Shown: positions 11,386 through 18,043, numbered from the stretch's first letter. The stretch is DNA of 64,000 nucleotides from Macrostomum lignano (GCA_002269645.1 NIVC01000023.1:558001-622000), one strand, 5' to 3'. Notes: generated from the sequence alone by a model not told the origin. Numbers and translations: made by a program.

Positions 11386-14300
11386 ATGAATTTAGTTTGC
11401 CTTCTATTGATTTCCTCGGCTGTGGGTGAGTAAAACTTAAATCAATTACTGCAACATGTAAATAATAATTATGCTAATTGACTCTTCATATCATAAATGC
11501 AGTGCTGCCGGAAAAGGTCCTTGGTAGCACCACTATGCTAGCTGATTCTACACCTATGCCAGATGCCGATTCTACACTTATGTCAGCTGATTCTACTCCT
11601 ATGACAGCTGATTCTACACCTATGCCAGATACCGATTCTACACTTATGTCAGCTGATTCTACTCCTATGACAGCTGATTCTACACTTATGTCAGCTGATT
11701 CTACACCTATGCCAGATACCAATTCTACACTTATGTCAGCTGATTCTACACCTATGCCAGATACCGATTCTACACTTATGTCAGCTGATTCTACACCTAT
11801 GCCAGATGCCGATTCTACACTTATGTCAGCTGATTCTACTCCTATGACAGCTGATTCTACACCTATGCCAGATACCGATTCTACACTTATGTCAGCTGAT
11901 TCTACACCTATGACAGCTGATTCTACACTTATGTCAGCTGATTCTACACCTATGCCAGATACCAATTCTACACTTATGTCAGCTGATTCTACACCTATGC
12001 CAGATACCGATTCTACACTTATGTCAGCTGATTCTACACCTATGCCAGATACCAATTCTACACTTATGTCAGCTGATTCTACTCCTATGACAGCTGATTC
12101 TACACTTATGTCAGCTGATTCTACACCTATGCCAGATACCGATTCTACACTTATGTCAGCTGATTCTACACCTATGCCAGATACCGATTCTACACTTATG
12201 TCAGCTGATTCTACTCCTATGACAGCTGATTCTACACCTATGCCAGATGCCGATTCTACACTTATGTCAGCTGATTCTACTCCTATGACAGCTGATTCTA
12301 CACCTATGCCAGATACCGATTCTACACTTATGTCAGCTGATTCTACTCCTATGACAGCTGATTCTACACTTATGTCAGCTGATTCTACACCTATGCCAGA
12401 TACCAATTCTACACTTATGTCAGCTGATTCTACACCTATGCCAGATACCGATTCTACACTTATGTCAGCTGATTCTACACCTATGCCAGATACCAATTCT
12501 ACACTTATGTCAGCTGATTCTACTCCTATGACAGCTGATTCTACACTTATGTCAGCTGATTCTACACCTATGCCAGATACCGATTCTACACTTATGTCAG
12601 CTGATTCTACACCTATGCCAGATACCGATTCTACACTTATGTCAGCTGATTCTACTCCTATGACAGCTGATTCTACACCTATGACAGCTGATTCTACACC
12701 TATGACAGCTGATTCTACACCTATGACAGCTGATTCTACACCTATGCCAGATACCAATTCTACACTTATGTCAGCTGATTCTACACCTATGCCAGATACC
12801 GATTCTACTCCTATGTCAGCTGATTCTACTCCTATGTCAGCTGATTCTACTCCTATGTCAGCTGATTCTACTCCTATGACAGCTGATTCTACTCCTTTGA
12901 CAGCTGACTCAACTGCAGCACCTGCTGACTCCACCGCAGCTCCAGCTGACTCCACCGCTACTCCTGCTGACTCCACCGCAGCTCCTGCTGACTCCACCGC
13001 TACTCCTTCTGACTCCACCGCTACTCCTGCTGACTCCACCGCTACTCCTGCTGACTCCACCGCTACTCCTGCTGACTCCACCGCTACTCCTGCTGACTCC
13101 ACCGCTACTCCTGCTGACTCCACCGCTACTCCTGCTGACTCCACCGCTACTCCTGCTGACTCCACCGCTACTCCTGCTGACTCCACCGCTACTCCTGCTG
13201 ACTCCACCGCTACTCCTGCTGACTCCACCGCTACTCCTGCTGACTCCACCGCAGCTCCTGCTGACTCCACCGCAGCTCCTGCTGACTCCACCGCAGCTCC
13301 TGGTGCCTCAACTGCAGCACCCGCTGACTCCACCGCAGCTCCTGCTGACTCCACCGCAGCTCCTGGTGCCTCAACTGCAGCACCCGCTGACTCCACCGCA
13401 GCTCCTGCTGACTCCACCGCAGCTCCTGGTGCCTCAACTGCAGCACCCGCTGACTCCACCGCAGCTCCTGGTGCCTCAACTGCAGCACCCGCTAACTCCA
13501 CCGCAGCTCCTTCTGACTCCACCGCAGCTCCTGCTGACTCCACCGCAGCTCCTGCTGACTCCACCGCAGCTCCTGCTGACTCCACCGCAGCTTCTGGTGC
13601 CTCCACCGCAGCTCCTGCTGACTCCACCGCAGCTCCTGCTGACTCCACCGCAGCTTCTGGTGTCTCAACTGCAGCACCCGCTGACTCTACCGCTGCTCCT
13701 GGTGTCTCAACTGCAGCACCCGCTGACTCCACCGCTGCTCCTGGTGCTTCCACCGCAGCTCCTGGTGTCTCAACTGCAGCACCCGCTGACTCCACCGCTG
13801 CTCCTGGTGTCTCAACTGCAGCACCCGCTGACTCCACCGCAGCTCCTGGTGTCTCAACTGCAGCACCCGCTGACTCCACCGCAGCTCCTGGTGTCTCAAC
13901 TGCAGCACCCGCTGACTCCACCGCTGCTCCTGGTGCTTCCACCGCAGCTCCTGGTGTCTCAACTGCAGCACCCGCTGACTCCACCGCTGCTCCTGGTGTC
14001 TCAACTGCAGCACCCGCTGACTCCACCGCTGCTCCTGGTGCTTCCACCGCAGCTCCTGGTGTCTCAACTGCAGCACCCGCTGACTCCACCGCTGCTCCTG
14101 GTGTCTCAACTGCAGCACCCGCTGACTCCACCGCTGCTCCTGGTGCTTCCACCGCAGCTCCTGGTGTCTCAACTGCAGCACCCACTGACTCCACCGCTGC
14201 TCTTGGTGCTTCCACCGCAGCTCCTGGTGTCTCAACTGCAGCACCCACTGACTCCACCGCTGCTCTTGGTGCTTCCACCGCAGCTCCTGGTGTCTCAACT

Positions 14301-17300: not shown

Positions 17301-18043
17301 TTAACATAAGAATCCTAACTTTTTGAACGAAAAACTTTATGAATATCAATAGGGTTTATGAGAAAGGCACAACATATCAAAAGATGAACATTGGGTCTGC
17401 ATGCTATCGAAATCAATAACCATTTTTGTTCTGAATTGTGCTAAATTTTCCCAAAAAGAGGCTTCCCATCCGGATCTACTACTTGACTTGTCCTCGCACA
17501 ATTCGCGATCAGTGTCATCCACTCGTGACCAAAAACTCCCCGCAGACATACCCAGAAAGCGCCGCCGGCTCTTCACTGTACATCCGCGGCCAAGAGGGCA
17601 CCTCGGCGTCGCCAAGTCGTCGGGCGGCGCTGAATGTCGCCGCCGCCCCGGCCGCTTCGGTGGCTGTGCAGCGCGAGTCCAGCTGGCAGGAGTACGTCGC
17701 CGGCGACGCCGGCCGCGGCTCAGCCAGACCCAGACGGGCGATGGTCACCGACTTCAGCACCCCGGTGACCGAGCCGGCCGGATATCCCGTCAGCCTGTCC
17801 AGGGCCTACGCCGAACGATTTACGGTTGACTATGTAAGAATGTAATAATGGCATTGTGTGGCTACTGCAGTATTAACAATGGCTAGAGATAAACAAATAT
17901 GTGCTGCACTACAAATCTTACAGTATTTGAATAGAGAAACAAAAAGAAGAAAGGCTTGAATTTCAAACATGACTTTTCCTACCTTGATTTTGCAGGGCCA
18001 GTCATCGCCTGTCAACTCGGCAGAGGGCAGGCAGTACTTTTAG
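11386..18043 (+). CDS. Transmembrane mucin (SP-PTS-EGF-SEA-EGF-EGF-TM-cytoplasmic tail; MUC13-like domain order), 7 coding exons, 1527 aa. Exons: 11386-11425, 11503-14859, 15009-15139, 15544-15769, 16267-16760, 17546-17833, 17996-18043
   Basis: All six introns are GT-AG with matching phases (1,1,0,1,0,0). The summed CDS is 4584 nt with no internal stop. Features: signal peptide MNLVCLLLISSAVVLPEKVLG; EGF CAAVVCQNLGSCYVSDQIAKCGCRSGFTGSLC; SEA-like region with RQGSVLAD; two further 6-Cys EGF repeats; TM PAIIGLIVACCVLFLLALIGIVLYI followed by KLRRR; C-terminus EGRQYF*. Confidence 0.88.
11503..14859 (+). CDS. Mucin exon 2: PTS tandem-repeat domain (7-aa/21-bp units ADSTPMx, ADSTATP, ADSTAAP, GASTAAP, GVSTAAP) plus first EGF-like domain
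   Basis: Uninterrupted ORF (track 11478-14894). Branch-like CTAAT and TGCAG acceptor at 11502; T|GTAAGT donor at 14860. Confidence 0.92.
15150..15531. repeat. (TATC)n microsatellite filling mucin intron 3
   Basis: Direct read; intron 15140-15543. Confidence 0.96.
15803..16207. repeat. (ACTG)n microsatellite filling mucin intron 4
   Basis: Direct read; intron 15770-16266. Confidence 0.96.
16867..17472. mobile_element. Palindromic MITE-like element in mucin intron 5 (related sequence at ~54930-55230)
   Basis: GGACGGGAAACCTCG..GATATGCTGTGCCC at left is mirrored by GGCACAACATATCAAAAGATG..GAGGCTTCCCATCC at right. An inner inverted repeat pairs 17132-17170 with 17210-17250. Homologous sequence recurs at 55 kb. 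Confidence 0.7.

What the first reader, a model, noticed from the sequence alone, without database searches (positions are those of the whole stretch)
11386..18043. Invertebrate transmembrane mucin with vertebrate MUC13-like architecture, invisible as a whole to the ORF track
Seen in sequence: seven phase-compatible exons give SP-PTS-EGF-SEA-EGF-EGF-TM-tail, with RQG/SVLAD at the position of the SEA autoproteolysis site. Established: SEA domains of MUC1/MUC3/MUC13/MUC17 self-cleave at G|S-V-V-V, and EGF-SEA-EGF-EGF-TM is the MUC13 order. Inference: this is a self-cleaving, sheddable glycocalyx or mucus protein of an invertebrate epithelium, either a deep homologue or a convergent domain assembly. 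Automated annotation is likely to fragment it.
Basis: partly seen in the sequence, partly recalled or inferred. Interest (0 to 1): 0.75.

Follow-up and report, generated by a model that had tools for sequence, protein, structure and literature searches.

The report
Flatworm membrane mucin with hidden SEA domain
This is a real seven-exon gene of the flatworm Macrostomum lignano encoding a long, sugar-carrying cell-surface mucin whose stalk has the same domain order as human MUC13. Standard domain models miss its SEA domain, and the public gene models hold it only as fragments.

Summary
Seven GT/AG exons (11386-18043, + strand) join in frame into a 1527-aa type I membrane protein. Its order is signal peptide, 1075-aa Pro/Thr/Ser tandem-repeat domain, EGF, a 120-aa SEA-like domain, EGF, EGF, one transmembrane helix and a 163-aa tail.

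A 99%-identical UniRef fragment from Macrostomum lignano reproduces five of the six junctions. Variation among repeat units is mostly synonymous only in the mucin frame.

Pfam's SEA model does not hit the middle domain. The SEA fold is supported in three other ways:
- An exhaustive HMMER search links it to fish and sea-star proteins whose aligned stretches are Pfam SEA.
- AlphaFold gives the SEA beta-alpha-beta-beta-alpha-beta fold, with G1204-S1205 in the beta2-beta3 turn.
- Foldseek's best PDB matches are SEA domains.

Self-cleavage, shedding and epithelial expression remain inference. No specific kinship with MUC13 was found. The nearest relatives are uncharacterised SEA-EGF mucin-like proteins of pike-like fishes and a starfish.

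The protein ends in R-Q-Y-F, like the KRIT1-binding R-D-Y-F end of HEG1, the gene next to MUC13. The rest of the tail shows no significant similarity.

Verdict: a new, poorly annotated member of the SEA-type membrane mucins, of moderate interest.

The parts
11262..11269 (+). TATATAAG, a TATA-box-like motif 124 nt upstream of the ATG
   Evidence: Read directly from the sequence; function not tested.
11386..11425 (+). Exon 1: start codon and the first 13 codons of the signal peptide (MNLVCLLLISSAV); ends in phase 1; donor GTGAGT
   Evidence: The hydrophobic N-terminal window is one of only two in the protein. There is no outside transcript support for this junction.
11503..14859 (+). Exon 2 (3357 nt): end of the signal peptide, the whole PTS domain and EGF1; ends in phase 1; donor GTAAGT. 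An alternative in-phase donor, GTGAGA, lies 9 nt upstream (exon end 14850) and would remove the sixth Cys of EGF1.
   Evidence: P0001 uses the downstream donor; P0002 and P0003 use the upstream one (GSL|LIRL).
11526..12923 (+). PTS block 1: about 466 aa of 7-8-residue units such as ADSTPMT, ADSTLMS and ADSTPMPDT(D/N); S 19.5%, T 20.8%, P 12.7%, D 16.5%, M 13.3%
   Evidence: TRF array 11540-12907; composition.
12924..14750 (+). PTS block 2: 85 heptad units (ADSTAAP 28, GASTAAP 18, GVSTAAP 17, ADSTATP 12, others fewer). The Ser-Thr pair is invariant in all 85 units.
   Evidence: TRF array 12903-14701, period 21 and multiples. Codon differences from the unit consensus are 125 synonymous / 96 non-synonymous in this frame, against 8/195 and 4/212 in the other two frames.
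14757..14852 (+). EGF1 (C1099-C1130, six Cys, spacing C-x4-C-x5-C-x8-C-x-C-x8-C)
   Evidence: Pfam EGF/EGF_2; PDB Notch and factor VII/IX EGF matches; coordinates.
15009..15139 (+). Exon 3: N-terminal part of the SEA-like domain (beta1 and the start of alpha1); phase 1 in, phase 0 out
15146..15532 (+). Intron 3, almost entirely an (ATCT)~97 microsatellite
15544..15769 (+). Exon 4: C-terminal part of the SEA-like domain (rest of alpha1, beta2, the G|S turn, beta3, alpha2, beta4); phase 0 in, phase 1 out. The SEA module as a whole is therefore flanked by phase-1 introns.
15625..15639 (+). G1204-S1205-V-L-A: candidate SEA autoproteolysis site (cleavage would fall between 15627 and 15628)
   Evidence: G-S is invariant in the alignment with Pfam-SEA-positive fish and starfish domains. 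It lies between strands E61-70 and E75-83 of the AlphaFold model.
15802..16207 (+). Intron 4, almost entirely an (ACTG)~100 microsatellite
16267..16760 (+). Exon 5: EGF2 (16278-16400), EGF3 (16410-16511), transmembrane helix (16533-16604), polybasic stop-transfer KLRRR and the start of the tail. The obvious ctgcag acceptor at 16215 runs into a TGA, so the cccag acceptor at 16266 is the one in frame.
   Evidence: P0001 reads IVEW|GNPC across this junction.
17546..17833 (+). Exon 6: cytoplasmic tail (96 codons; Ala/Ser/Arg/Gly-rich, five Tyr)
   Evidence: no Pfam match.
17996..18043 (+). Exon 7: last 15 codons GQSSPVNSAEGRQYF plus the stop; the C-terminal R-Q-Y-F is encoded at 18029-18040
   Evidence: The end is conserved in all three paralogue/allele models. 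HEG1 ends ...SRRRDYF.

Best explanation
The locus is an intact gene of the flatworm Macrostomum lignano for a type I transmembrane, SEA-type cell-surface mucin of 1527 aa.

Shown:
- An N-terminal hydrophobic leader.
- A 1075-aa Pro/Thr/Ser tandem-repeat domain held in one 3.36-kb exon. Its Ser-Thr pairs are invariant and its unit-to-unit variation is largely synonymous.
- A membrane-proximal stalk of EGF1, a 120-aa SEA-fold domain, EGF2 and EGF3.
- One transmembrane helix with a polybasic anchor.
- A 163-aa, probably disordered tail ending in RQYF.

Inferred:
- The repeat domain is densely O-glycosylated and stands far out from the membrane as a glycocalyx rod.
- The SEA domain cleaves itself while folding, between G1204 and S1205, by an N-to-O acyl shift as in MUC1, MUC3, MUC12, MUC13 and MUC17. 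That would leave a large mucin subunit held non-covalently to a small EGF2-EGF3-TM-tail subunit.
- Mechanical pull could then strip the mucin subunit off without tearing the membrane. The remaining subunit and its Tyr/Ser-rich tail could signal.

By sub-claim, my confidence is about 0.9 for a real gene encoding a membrane mucin-like protein, about 0.85 for the SEA fold, about 0.55 for autoproteolysis at G|S, and about 0.4 for an epithelial barrier role.
For: - Gene model: seven GT/AG exons in frame. Junctions 2/3 to 6/7 are identical in UniRef A0A1I8IR67.
- Reading frame of the repeats: 125 synonymous / 96 non-synonymous codon differences in the mucin frame, against 8/195 and 4/212 in the others; Ser-Thr invariant in 85 of 85 units.
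- Mucin composition: S+T 36%, P 13% over 1075 aa.
- EGF domains: Pfam PF00008 at 1.4e-8, three stretches; Notch and coagulation-factor EGF matches in the PDB.
- SEA by transitive homology: exhaustive phmmer of the 127-aa region against 1.84 billion proteins hits Dallia pectoralis KAJ7995496 (6e-10), Esox lucius XP_034148932 (3.6e-6) and Acanthaster planci XP_022090680 (2.4e-4). The aligned stretches of the Dallia and Acanthaster proteins are Pfam SEA, at 1e-22 and 2.6e-18.
- SEA-EGF module: the C-terminal half of the SEA plus EGF2 is 39% identical over 100 aa to the pike SEA-EGF module (5e-14).
- SEA by structure: AlphaFold2 gives pLDDT 79.6, pTM 0.75 and the order beta-alpha-beta-beta-alpha-beta. 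Foldseek's best PDB matches are SEA domains: 2e7v (TM 0.65/0.68, rmsd 2.3), 1ivz and 8vm1 (MUC16), and 9nrc (TMPRSS6).
- Cleavage motif: G-S-[VIL]-[VIL]-[VA] is invariant for G-S across all aligned relatives and sits in the beta2-beta3 turn.
- Established knowledge: MUC1 cleaves between G and S of GSVVV (PMC9564314). Cleaved SEA halves stay associated and need force to separate (PMC10556640).
- Conservation: all Cys, the G-S and the RQYF end are kept in three paralogue/allele models.
Against: - Pfam SEA (PF01390) gives no hit to this protein even at E<=10. Neither phmmer nor a family profile finds any SEA chain in the PDB.
- Foldseek E-values are only about 3e-3, and generic ferredoxin-like folds follow closely.
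- The AlphaFold alignment had 6 rows. The 240-aa construct was poor (pLDDT 58), with EGF1 and EGF3 unresolved.
- A G-S-like motif is not proof of cleavage: the DSVLV site of MUC16 is not the cleavage site used (PMC4456727).
- No signal-peptide predictor was available, and junction 1/2 lacks outside support.
- There are no expression, glycosylation or protein data.
- No other flatworm relative was found at E<=0.001.
Confidence: 0.6

Rival explanations
1. The SEA-like domain is a non-cleaving spacer. The protein is a single-chain membrane mucin or adhesion stalk, and any release of the ectodomain comes from other proteases.
For: The domain is too divergent for Pfam SEA. Many SEA domains do not self-cleave, and a motif look-alike in MUC16 is not used (PMC4456727). 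An extra Cys (C1201) three residues before the G-S, and a likely C1174-C1196 disulfide shared with the starfish protein, could change the strain needed for cleavage.
Against: G-S followed by beta-branched or hydrophobic residues is invariant in every aligned relative. It sits exactly in the beta2-beta3 turn, which is the known cleavage geometry.
Confidence: 0.25
2. It is a HEG1-like junctional receptor rather than, or as well as, a barrier mucin. It would descend from the ancestor of the neighbouring vertebrate genes HEG1 and MUC13, and its C-terminal R-x-Y-F would dock the FERM domain of a KRIT1 orthologue.
For: - The protein ends ...GRQYF. Human HEG1 ends ...SRRRDYF (PDB 3u7d chain B).
- The terminal Tyr-Phe is the main determinant of KRIT1 binding, and Arg1378 (position -3) pairs with acidic KRIT1 residues (PMC3461514).
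- The HEG1 domain order is Ser/Thr-rich region, EGF, EGF, an 'unknown' 108-aa region, EGF, two juxtamembrane loops, TM and a 111-aa tail (PMC5374711). This has the same logic as here, with the unknown region where the SEA domain lies.
- HEG and MUC13 are adjacent genes and have been proposed to be related (PMC1552070).
Against: - Tail-to-tail Smith-Waterman scores are no better than shuffles: z = -0.1 for the full tail, and z = 1.35 (p = 0.11) for the last 45 residues.
- hhalign of the SEA-family profile against the HEG1 unknown region finds only an 11-column EGF motif.
- There is no NPxF motif.
- The HEG1 sequences used were machine-read from a supplementary figure and contain errors.
- A four-residue end motif can arise by chance.
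- Whether M. lignano has a KRIT1 gene could not be checked.
Confidence: 0.1
3. It is a cell-type-specific surface protein, for example of sperm, egg or gland cells, comparable to the sea-urchin 63-kDa sperm flagellar membrane protein that gave the SEA domain its name, rather than a general epithelial glycocalyx component.
For: SEA plus EGF plus TM proteins of invertebrates were first found on sperm (own knowledge: Bork and Patthy 1995). The gene has several near-identical copies, and no expression data were available.
Against: Nothing in the sequence points to a particular tissue. The very long PTS domain is typical of barrier or anti-adhesive mucins.
Confidence: 0.15
4. It is an annotation illusion: a decaying pseudogene, or chance open frames in repetitive DNA.
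For: Tandem repeats keep several frames open. For example, there is a 1070-aa ORF on the minus strand and a 602-aa open stretch in another plus frame. The genome is extremely repeat-rich.
Against: - Only the mucin frame shows a synonymous excess.
- All splice sites are canonical and in phase.
- All 18 EGF cysteines are intact.
- The paralogue models differ by 3-12 substitutions with no frameshift in the non-repeat part.
Confidence: 0.03

Closest known systems
Vertebrate MUC13 (SEA-type transmembrane mucin)
   Same: Same order of parts: signal peptide, PTS domain, EGF, SEA, EGF, EGF, TM, cytoplasmic tail (own knowledge for the exact MUC13 order; PTS, SEA and EGF content from PMC1552070). Both have G-S followed by hydrophobic residues at the SEA cleavage position.
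   Different: - No detectable specific sequence kinship: no MUC13-type protein appeared among the hits at E<=0.001.
- The PTS domain is one large exon here, but many small exons in MUC13 (PMC1552070).
- The tail is three times longer than I recall for MUC13 and is unrelated.
- Pfam SEA does not recognise this domain.
Esocid fish PTS-fn3-SEA-EGF membrane proteins: Esox lucius XP_034148932 (auto-named 'serine-rich adhesin for platelets'), Dallia pectoralis KAJ7995496 and the Umbra pygmaea SEA-domain protein
   Same: These are the best sequence matches. The SEA C-terminal half plus the following EGF is 34-39% identical, including R-x-G-S-[VL]-[IL]-x-D-x-D-L and C-x-C-x-x-G-F-x-D-x-N-P-x-x-P-G-T-x-C. 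They also have PTS stretches, and the Esox protein has a C-terminal TM helix.
   Different: The fish proteins repeat the fn3-SEA-EGF unit three or four times between PTS stretches. They have no EGF before the SEA, no second EGF after it, and a short unrelated tail.
Acanthaster planci XP_022090680 (uncharacterised SP-PTS-SEA-PTS-SEA-TM protein)
   Same: An invertebrate SEA-type membrane mucin-like protein. Its SEA N-terminal half is 29-32% identical, including the two cysteines (helix alpha1 and strand beta2) and K/S-G-S-I-V-A.
   Different: It has two SEA domains, no EGF domains and a short tail.
Sea-anemone 'mucin1-like' proteins (Actinia tenebrosa; PMC9080433)
   Same: An SP - PTS - SEA - TM architecture in a non-vertebrate animal.
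   Different: No EGF domains. These proteins were not compared by sequence here.
HEG1 (heart of glass)
   Same: A mucin-like Ser/Thr-rich ectodomain, EGF domains on both sides of a ~110-aa module, one TM helix, a tail of over 100 aa, and a C-terminal R-x-Y-F-COOH (PMC5374711, PMC3461514).
   Different: HEG1 has two EGFs before the middle module, no G-S site and no tandem repeats. There is no significant tail or middle-module similarity.

Membership tests
SEA domain (Pfam PF01390 / SEA fold) | Match to the family HMM | tested here: not met
   No PF01390 hit at E<=10, either for the 447-aa C-terminal part or for the 120-aa domain alone.
SEA domain (Pfam PF01390 / SEA fold) | Homology to accepted members (transitive) | tested here: met
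   phmmer E = 6e-10 and 2.4e-4 to proteins whose aligned stretches score 1e-22 and 2.6e-18 against PF01390.
SEA domain (Pfam PF01390 / SEA fold) | Alpha/beta sandwich with the order beta1-alpha1-beta2-beta3-alpha2-beta4 | tested here: met
   AlphaFold2 gives pLDDT 79.6 and pTM 0.75, with elements E2-12, H32-50, E61-70, E75-83, H90-107 and E117-119. The top Foldseek PDB matches are SEA domains with TM 0.64-0.68, at modest E-values of about 3e-3.
Self-cleaving SEA domains (MUC1/3/12/13/17, matriptase type) | G|S-[VI]-[VIL]-[VA] in the beta2-beta3 turn | tested here: met
   G1204-S-V-L-A. G-S is invariant in all aligned relatives, and in the model it lies between E61-70 and E75-83.
Self-cleaving SEA domains (MUC1/3/12/13/17, matriptase type) | Actual autoproteolysis into two non-covalently bound chains | not testable with these tools
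   This needs expression and a Western blot with G1204A and S1205A controls.
Transmembrane (cell-surface) mucins | Long PTS domain made of tandem repeats | tested here: met
   1075 aa with S+T 36%, P 13%. There are two arrays of 7-8-residue units, and the coding frame is confirmed.
Transmembrane (cell-surface) mucins | Signal peptide and a single C-terminal TM helix (type I topology) | tested here: inconclusive
   The TM helix 1341-1364 with KLRRR after it is clear, and the N-terminal hydrophobic stretch 1-22 is present. No signal-peptide predictor was available, and exon 1 lacks transcript support.
Transmembrane (cell-surface) mucins | Dense O-glycosylation | not testable with these tools
   Inferred only from composition.
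MUC13 orthologue | Domain order EGF-SEA-EGF-EGF-TM | tested here: met
MUC13 orthologue | SEA domain groups with MUC13 SEA domains (the criterion of Lang et al., PMC1552070) | tested here: inconclusive
   No MUC13-type hit at E<=0.001 in the exhaustive search. The nearest relatives are other SEA-EGF proteins. No tree was built, because MUC13 sequences could not be fetched.
MUC13 orthologue | PTS domain encoded by many exons, one repeat unit each (PMC1552070) | tested here: not met
   The whole PTS domain lies in the single exon 11503-14859.
MUC13 orthologue | Synteny with HEG1 | not testable with these tools
   No HEG-like second gene was recognised in the 64-kb window. The window is too repeat-rich and short to decide.
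HEG1 family | C-terminal R-x-Y-F-COOH (KRIT1 FERM ligand) | tested here: met
   RQYF here against RDYF in PDB 3u7d_B; role of the motif from PMC3461514.
HEG1 family | Conserved cytoplasmic tail sequence | tested here: not met
   Smith-Waterman against shuffles gives z = -0.1 (human tail), -1.1 (zebrafish tail) and 1.35 for the last 45 residues.
HEG1 family | Middle 'unknown region' homologous to this SEA domain | tested here: not met
   hhalign probability 24%, covering only an 11-column EGF motif. The HEG1 input was machine-read text with errors.

The most novel reading that the evidence does not exclude
The gene is a surviving representative of the ancestor of the adjacent vertebrate genes HEG1 and MUC13. 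That ancestor would be a self-cleaving SEA mucin whose tail docks a KRIT1/CCM1 orthologue through a C-terminal R-x-Y-F. If so, both the SEA-type membrane mucins and the HEG1-CCM junction pathway date back to the bilaterian ancestor, and the 'unknown region' of HEG1 is a decayed SEA domain.
Probability: 0.1. Interest if true: 0.75.

Novelty: new member of a known kind. Interest (0 to 1): 0.45.

Why it matters
As I recall it, Lang, Hansson and Samuelsson (2007) held that all transmembrane mucins arose within vertebrates; that paper could not be opened here. A complete PTS-EGF-SEA-EGF-EGF-TM protein in a flatworm, with detectable SEA-EGF sequence kinship to fish and starfish proteins, argues otherwise. 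It suggests the SEA-type membrane mucin plan is older and has been missed, for two reasons: its SEA domains fall below Pfam thresholds, and its repeat exons break gene prediction.

Macrostomum lignano is transparent and is amenable to RNAi and transgenesis. It could therefore serve as a simple in vivo system to test what SEA cleavage and mucin shedding do for an epithelium.

The finding is also a concrete annotation error to fix: three fragmentary UniProt entries, one of them mis-framed.

Tried and rejected
- Pfam scan for SEA on the C-terminal 447 aa and on the 120-aa domain alone: no hit.
- phmmer of the domain, and a six-sequence family profile, against all PDB sequences: only chance matches, no SEA chain.
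- Word-indexed homologue search with the SEA region alone: nothing. With the family alignment it returned only three fish fragments.
- Look-up of the genomic place of A0A1I8IR67: not on record. The paralogous locus could therefore not be compared at the DNA level.
- The obvious ctgcag acceptor at 16215 for exon 5 was rejected, because it runs into a TGA after 14 codons.
- AlphaFold of the whole 240-aa stalk: pLDDT 58, with EGF1 and EGF3 below 50. It was not used beyond showing that the SEA core persists.
- HEG1 kinship was tested with machine-read HEG1 sequences from a supplementary figure. Tail similarity was not significant, and there was no profile match to the HEG1 unknown region.
- The apparent alignment G-x-Y-P ... 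G-Q-x-x-P ... R-x-Y-F has p of about 0.11 against shuffles, so I do not rely on it.
- The UniRef name 'Ig-like domain-containing protein' for A0A1I8I4C2 was rejected. Its N-terminal 400 aa are an upstream simple repeat plus the PTS repeat read out of frame.
- Lang et al. 2007 (PMC2042186) is not held, so its statement on the vertebrate origin of transmembrane mucins is cited from memory.

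
Full report
**What is there.** Reading 10800-18600 and translating in three frames, I rebuilt the gene. The exons are 11386-11425, 11503-14859, 15009-15139, 15544-15769, 16267-16760, 17546-17833 and 17996-18043 on the + strand. Every intron starts with GT and ends with AG. The phases fit (1, 1, 0, 1, 0, 0), and the 4584-nt CDS translates to 1527 aa without a stop. A TATATAAG lies 124 nt upstream of the ATG. For exon 5 the more obvious ctgcag acceptor at 16215 runs into a TGA, so the cccag acceptor at 16266 is the one in frame.

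**Independent support for the model.** A protein search returned one cluster, from Macrostomum lignano. It holds UniRef A0A1I8IR67 (455 aa, 'EGF-like domain-containing protein'), A0A1I8GUW9 (423 aa) and A0A1I8I4C2 (819 aa, 'Ig-like domain-containing protein'). This identifies the organism.

- A0A1I8IR67 aligns ungapped to residues 1073-1527 with three substitutions, so junctions 2/3 to 6/7 are reproduced exactly.
- The other two entries use an in-phase alternative donor 9 nt upstream (GTGAGA at 14851). That donor removes the sixth cysteine of EGF1.
- None of the three entries starts with Met.
- The 819-aa entry joins an upstream simple repeat (window 7034-7462) to the mucin repeats read in the wrong frame.

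Junction 1/2 has no outside support.

**The repeat domain is coding, in the mucin frame.** Tandem repeats keep several frames open, for example a 1070-aa ORF on the minus strand, so ORF length proves nothing. I cut block 2 (12903-14700) into its 85 units of 21 nt and compared each with the consensus.

| Frame | Synonymous codon differences | Non-synonymous codon differences |
|---|---|---|
| ADSTAAP (mucin frame) | 125 | 96 |
| Second frame | 8 | 195 |
| Third frame | 4 | 212 |

The Ser and Thr codons vary only at the third base, in all 85 units. Over residues 22-1096 the composition is S 17%, T 19%, P 13% and A 25%. Block 1 (units such as ADSTPMT, ADSTLMS and ADSTPMPDTD) is also rich in Asp and Met. 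Only two hydrophobic windows exist: residues 1-22 and 1336-1364.

**The stalk.** Pfam finds EGF three times (PF00008, 1.4e-8). The PDB matches are Notch and coagulation-factor EGF pairs. Each EGF has six cysteines.

The 120 residues between EGF1 and EGF2 get no Pfam hit at all, even at E<=10, and no PDB sequence hit.

1. *Transitive homology.* An exhaustive phmmer search of 1.84 billion representative proteins with the 127-aa region gave nine hits at E<=0.001.
   - Besides the flatworm's own cluster, three hits are relevant (names): Dallia pectoralis KAJ7995496 (6e-10), Esox lucius XP_034148932 (3.6e-6) and Acanthaster planci XP_022090680 (2.4e-4).
   - The Dallia and Acanthaster proteins score 1e-22 and 2.6e-18 against Pfam SEA, exactly where they align with the query.
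   - Three of the other hits were scanned and carry bacterial-type Ig or PKD repeats, matched in many short stretches. I take them as noise.
2. *Structure prediction.* AlphaFold2 on a six-row alignment gave pLDDT 79.6 and pTM 0.75, with the element order beta-alpha-beta-beta-alpha-beta.
3. *Fold search.* Foldseek against the PDB ranked SEA domains first: 2e7v (TM 0.65/0.68, rmsd 2.3 Å), 1ivz and 8vm1 (MUC16), and 9nrc (TMPRSS6). E-values were modest, about 3e-3.

Together these support a divergent SEA domain.

**The candidate cleavage site.** G1204-S1205 (codons 15625-15630) is invariant in the alignment with the fish and starfish SEA domains, which read RSGSVIVDF, RQGSVIVDF and TKGSIVATF. In the model it lies in the turn between strands 61-70 and 75-83. 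That is where MUC1 cleaves, between G and S of GSVVV (PMC9564314). Cleaved SEA halves stay associated and need force to part (PMC10556640). Cleavage here is an inference, because a look-alike motif in MUC16 is not the site used (PMC4456727).

**Who the relatives are.** The C-terminal half of the SEA plus EGF2 is 34-39% identical to the SEA-EGF units of the pike protein (2e-15 to 5e-14). The shared features include the unusual long last loop of the EGF, G-F-x-D-x-N-P-x-x-P-G-T-x-C. The pike protein is a large PTS-fn3-SEA-EGF triple repeat with a C-terminal TM helix. The starfish protein is SP-PTS-SEA-PTS-SEA-TM and shares two cysteines with the flatworm SEA domain.

No MUC13-, MUC3- or MUC17-type protein reached E<=0.001. 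In MUC13 the PTS domain is split over many exons (PMC1552070), whereas here it is one exon. The MUC13 likeness is therefore a likeness of domain order, and orthology is not shown.

The SEA module is flanked by phase-1 introns. By established knowledge of extracellular modules, that arrangement suits exon shuffling. It leaves both deep homology and independent assembly open. Invertebrate SP-PTS-SEA-TM proteins have been described in sea anemones (PMC9080433).

**A lead that went further than the finding.** The protein ends in GRQYF, and all three paralogue models keep this end.

- HEG1 is the gene next to MUC13 and has been proposed as its relative (PMC1552070). It binds KRIT1 mainly through its C-terminal Tyr-Phe, with Arg at position -3 (PMC3461514).
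- The PDB peptide reads YNPSFISDESRRRDYF.
- HEG1 is described as Ser/Thr-rich region, EGF, EGF, an 'unknown' 108-aa region, EGF, juxtamembrane loops, TM and a 111-aa tail (PMC5374711). That is the same plan, with an unassigned module where the SEA lies here.

I took machine-read HEG1 sequences from that paper's supplement and tested the idea. Tail-to-tail alignment scores are no better than shuffles, with z = -0.1 for the full tail and z = 1.35 (p = 0.11) for the last 45 residues. hhalign of the SEA-family profile against the HEG1 unknown region finds only an 11-column EGF motif. The HEG1 link therefore rests on architecture and a four-residue end motif. I rate it at about 0.1.

**Mechanism proposed.**
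- *Shown:* the parts and their order.
- *Inferred:* the leader directs the chain into the ER. The SEA domain folds and cleaves at G1204|S1205. The PTS domain is O-glycosylated in the Golgi. At the surface, a roughly 1200-residue mucin subunit is held by the reassembled SEA sheet to a subunit of EGF2, EGF3, TM and tail. Shear or a bound particle pulls the mucin subunit off. The tail, which has seven Tyr, many Ser and the RQYF end, may then engage cytoplasmic partners.

**Surroundings.**
- Introns 3 and 4 are almost pure microsatellites.
- MITE-like elements with 144-nt inverted ends lie 0.9 kb and 9 kb downstream.
- A second small mucin-like TM ORF lies at 25763-26233 on the minus strand.
- Fragments of a mariner-type transposase and of a retroelement's reverse transcriptase and RNase H lie at 43-46 kb.

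None of these is part of the gene.

**Verdict.** This is a new, mis-annotated invertebrate member of the SEA-type membrane mucins, with a SEA domain that standard models miss. Interest is moderate (0.45). It would rise if cleavage is shown or the HEG1/MUC13 ancestry is confirmed.

Noticed in passing
window 25763-26233 (-): A 156-aa ORF carries three exact 51-nt repeats (TRF array 26077-26250) encoding SGGSSTAGTATTSGVEL. These are followed by a Cys pair, a clear TM helix (AVVGLAITCSLLGVILVAAIILIIIV) and RRRF. It looks like a second, small mucin-like type I membrane protein on the opposite strand. It has no Pfam match.
   Followed up: partly
window 7034-7462 (+): An ORF through an (AGCACCAGGGGCGCC)n repeat (HQGRQ...RPRYANKLILSIPTKRKKLKVATFPGKKQLS) matches the N-terminus of UniRef A0A1I8I4C2. 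That entry then jumps into the mucin repeats out of frame. This is either a chimeric gene model or an upstream non-coding exon of the mucin gene.
   Followed up: partly
window 14851-14859: There are two in-phase donors 9 nt apart at the end of exon 2: GTGAGA at 14851 and GTAAGT at 14860. Public models use both. The upstream one deletes Cys-Glu-Arg and with it the sixth cysteine of EGF1, so this is either alternative splicing or a model error.
   Followed up: partly
window 14872-14900: A near-exact copy of the last ~27 nt of exon 2 (ggttcactggcagcttgtgtgagagatg) sits just inside intron 2. It is a small tandem duplication of the exon end.
   Followed up: no
window 15146-15532 and 15802-16207: Introns 3 and 4 of the gene consist almost wholly of (ATCT)~97 and (ACTG)~100 microsatellites. 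Similar tetranucleotide arrays lie at 2416-2749, 5511-5790 and 6295-6485.
   Followed up: no
window 18979-19729 and 27007-27736: Two copies of a short element bounded by inverted repeats (144 nt, 95% complementary, at the first copy), each carrying mirror-image ORFs. They look like MITEs or foldback elements.
   Followed up: partly
window 43239-43828 (-) and 45106-46147 (+): The first stretch holds a fragment of a mariner-type DDE transposase (PF01359, 1.3e-16). The second holds ORFs for the reverse transcriptase and RNase H of a retroelement (PF00078, 9.7e-17; PF17917, 2.3e-24). They are followed by a 65% G+C stretch at 46-48 kb with overlapping ORFs on both strands.
   Followed up: partly
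window 3315-5212, 37571-39357 and 62000-64000: Long minisatellites with strong strand skew: a G-rich 29-nt unit (GGGGTTGGGG...) at 3.3-5.2 kb, a C-rich 23-nt unit at 37.6-39.4 kb, and a stretch with GC skew -0.67 at the window's end. No function is suggested.
   Followed up: no
P0009 = Esox lucius XP_034148932: NCBI's automatic name, 'serine-rich adhesin for platelets', is a bacterial name misapplied. The protein is a PTS-fn3-SEA-EGF triple repeat with a TM helix, that is, a fish membrane mucin-like protein.
   Followed up: partly
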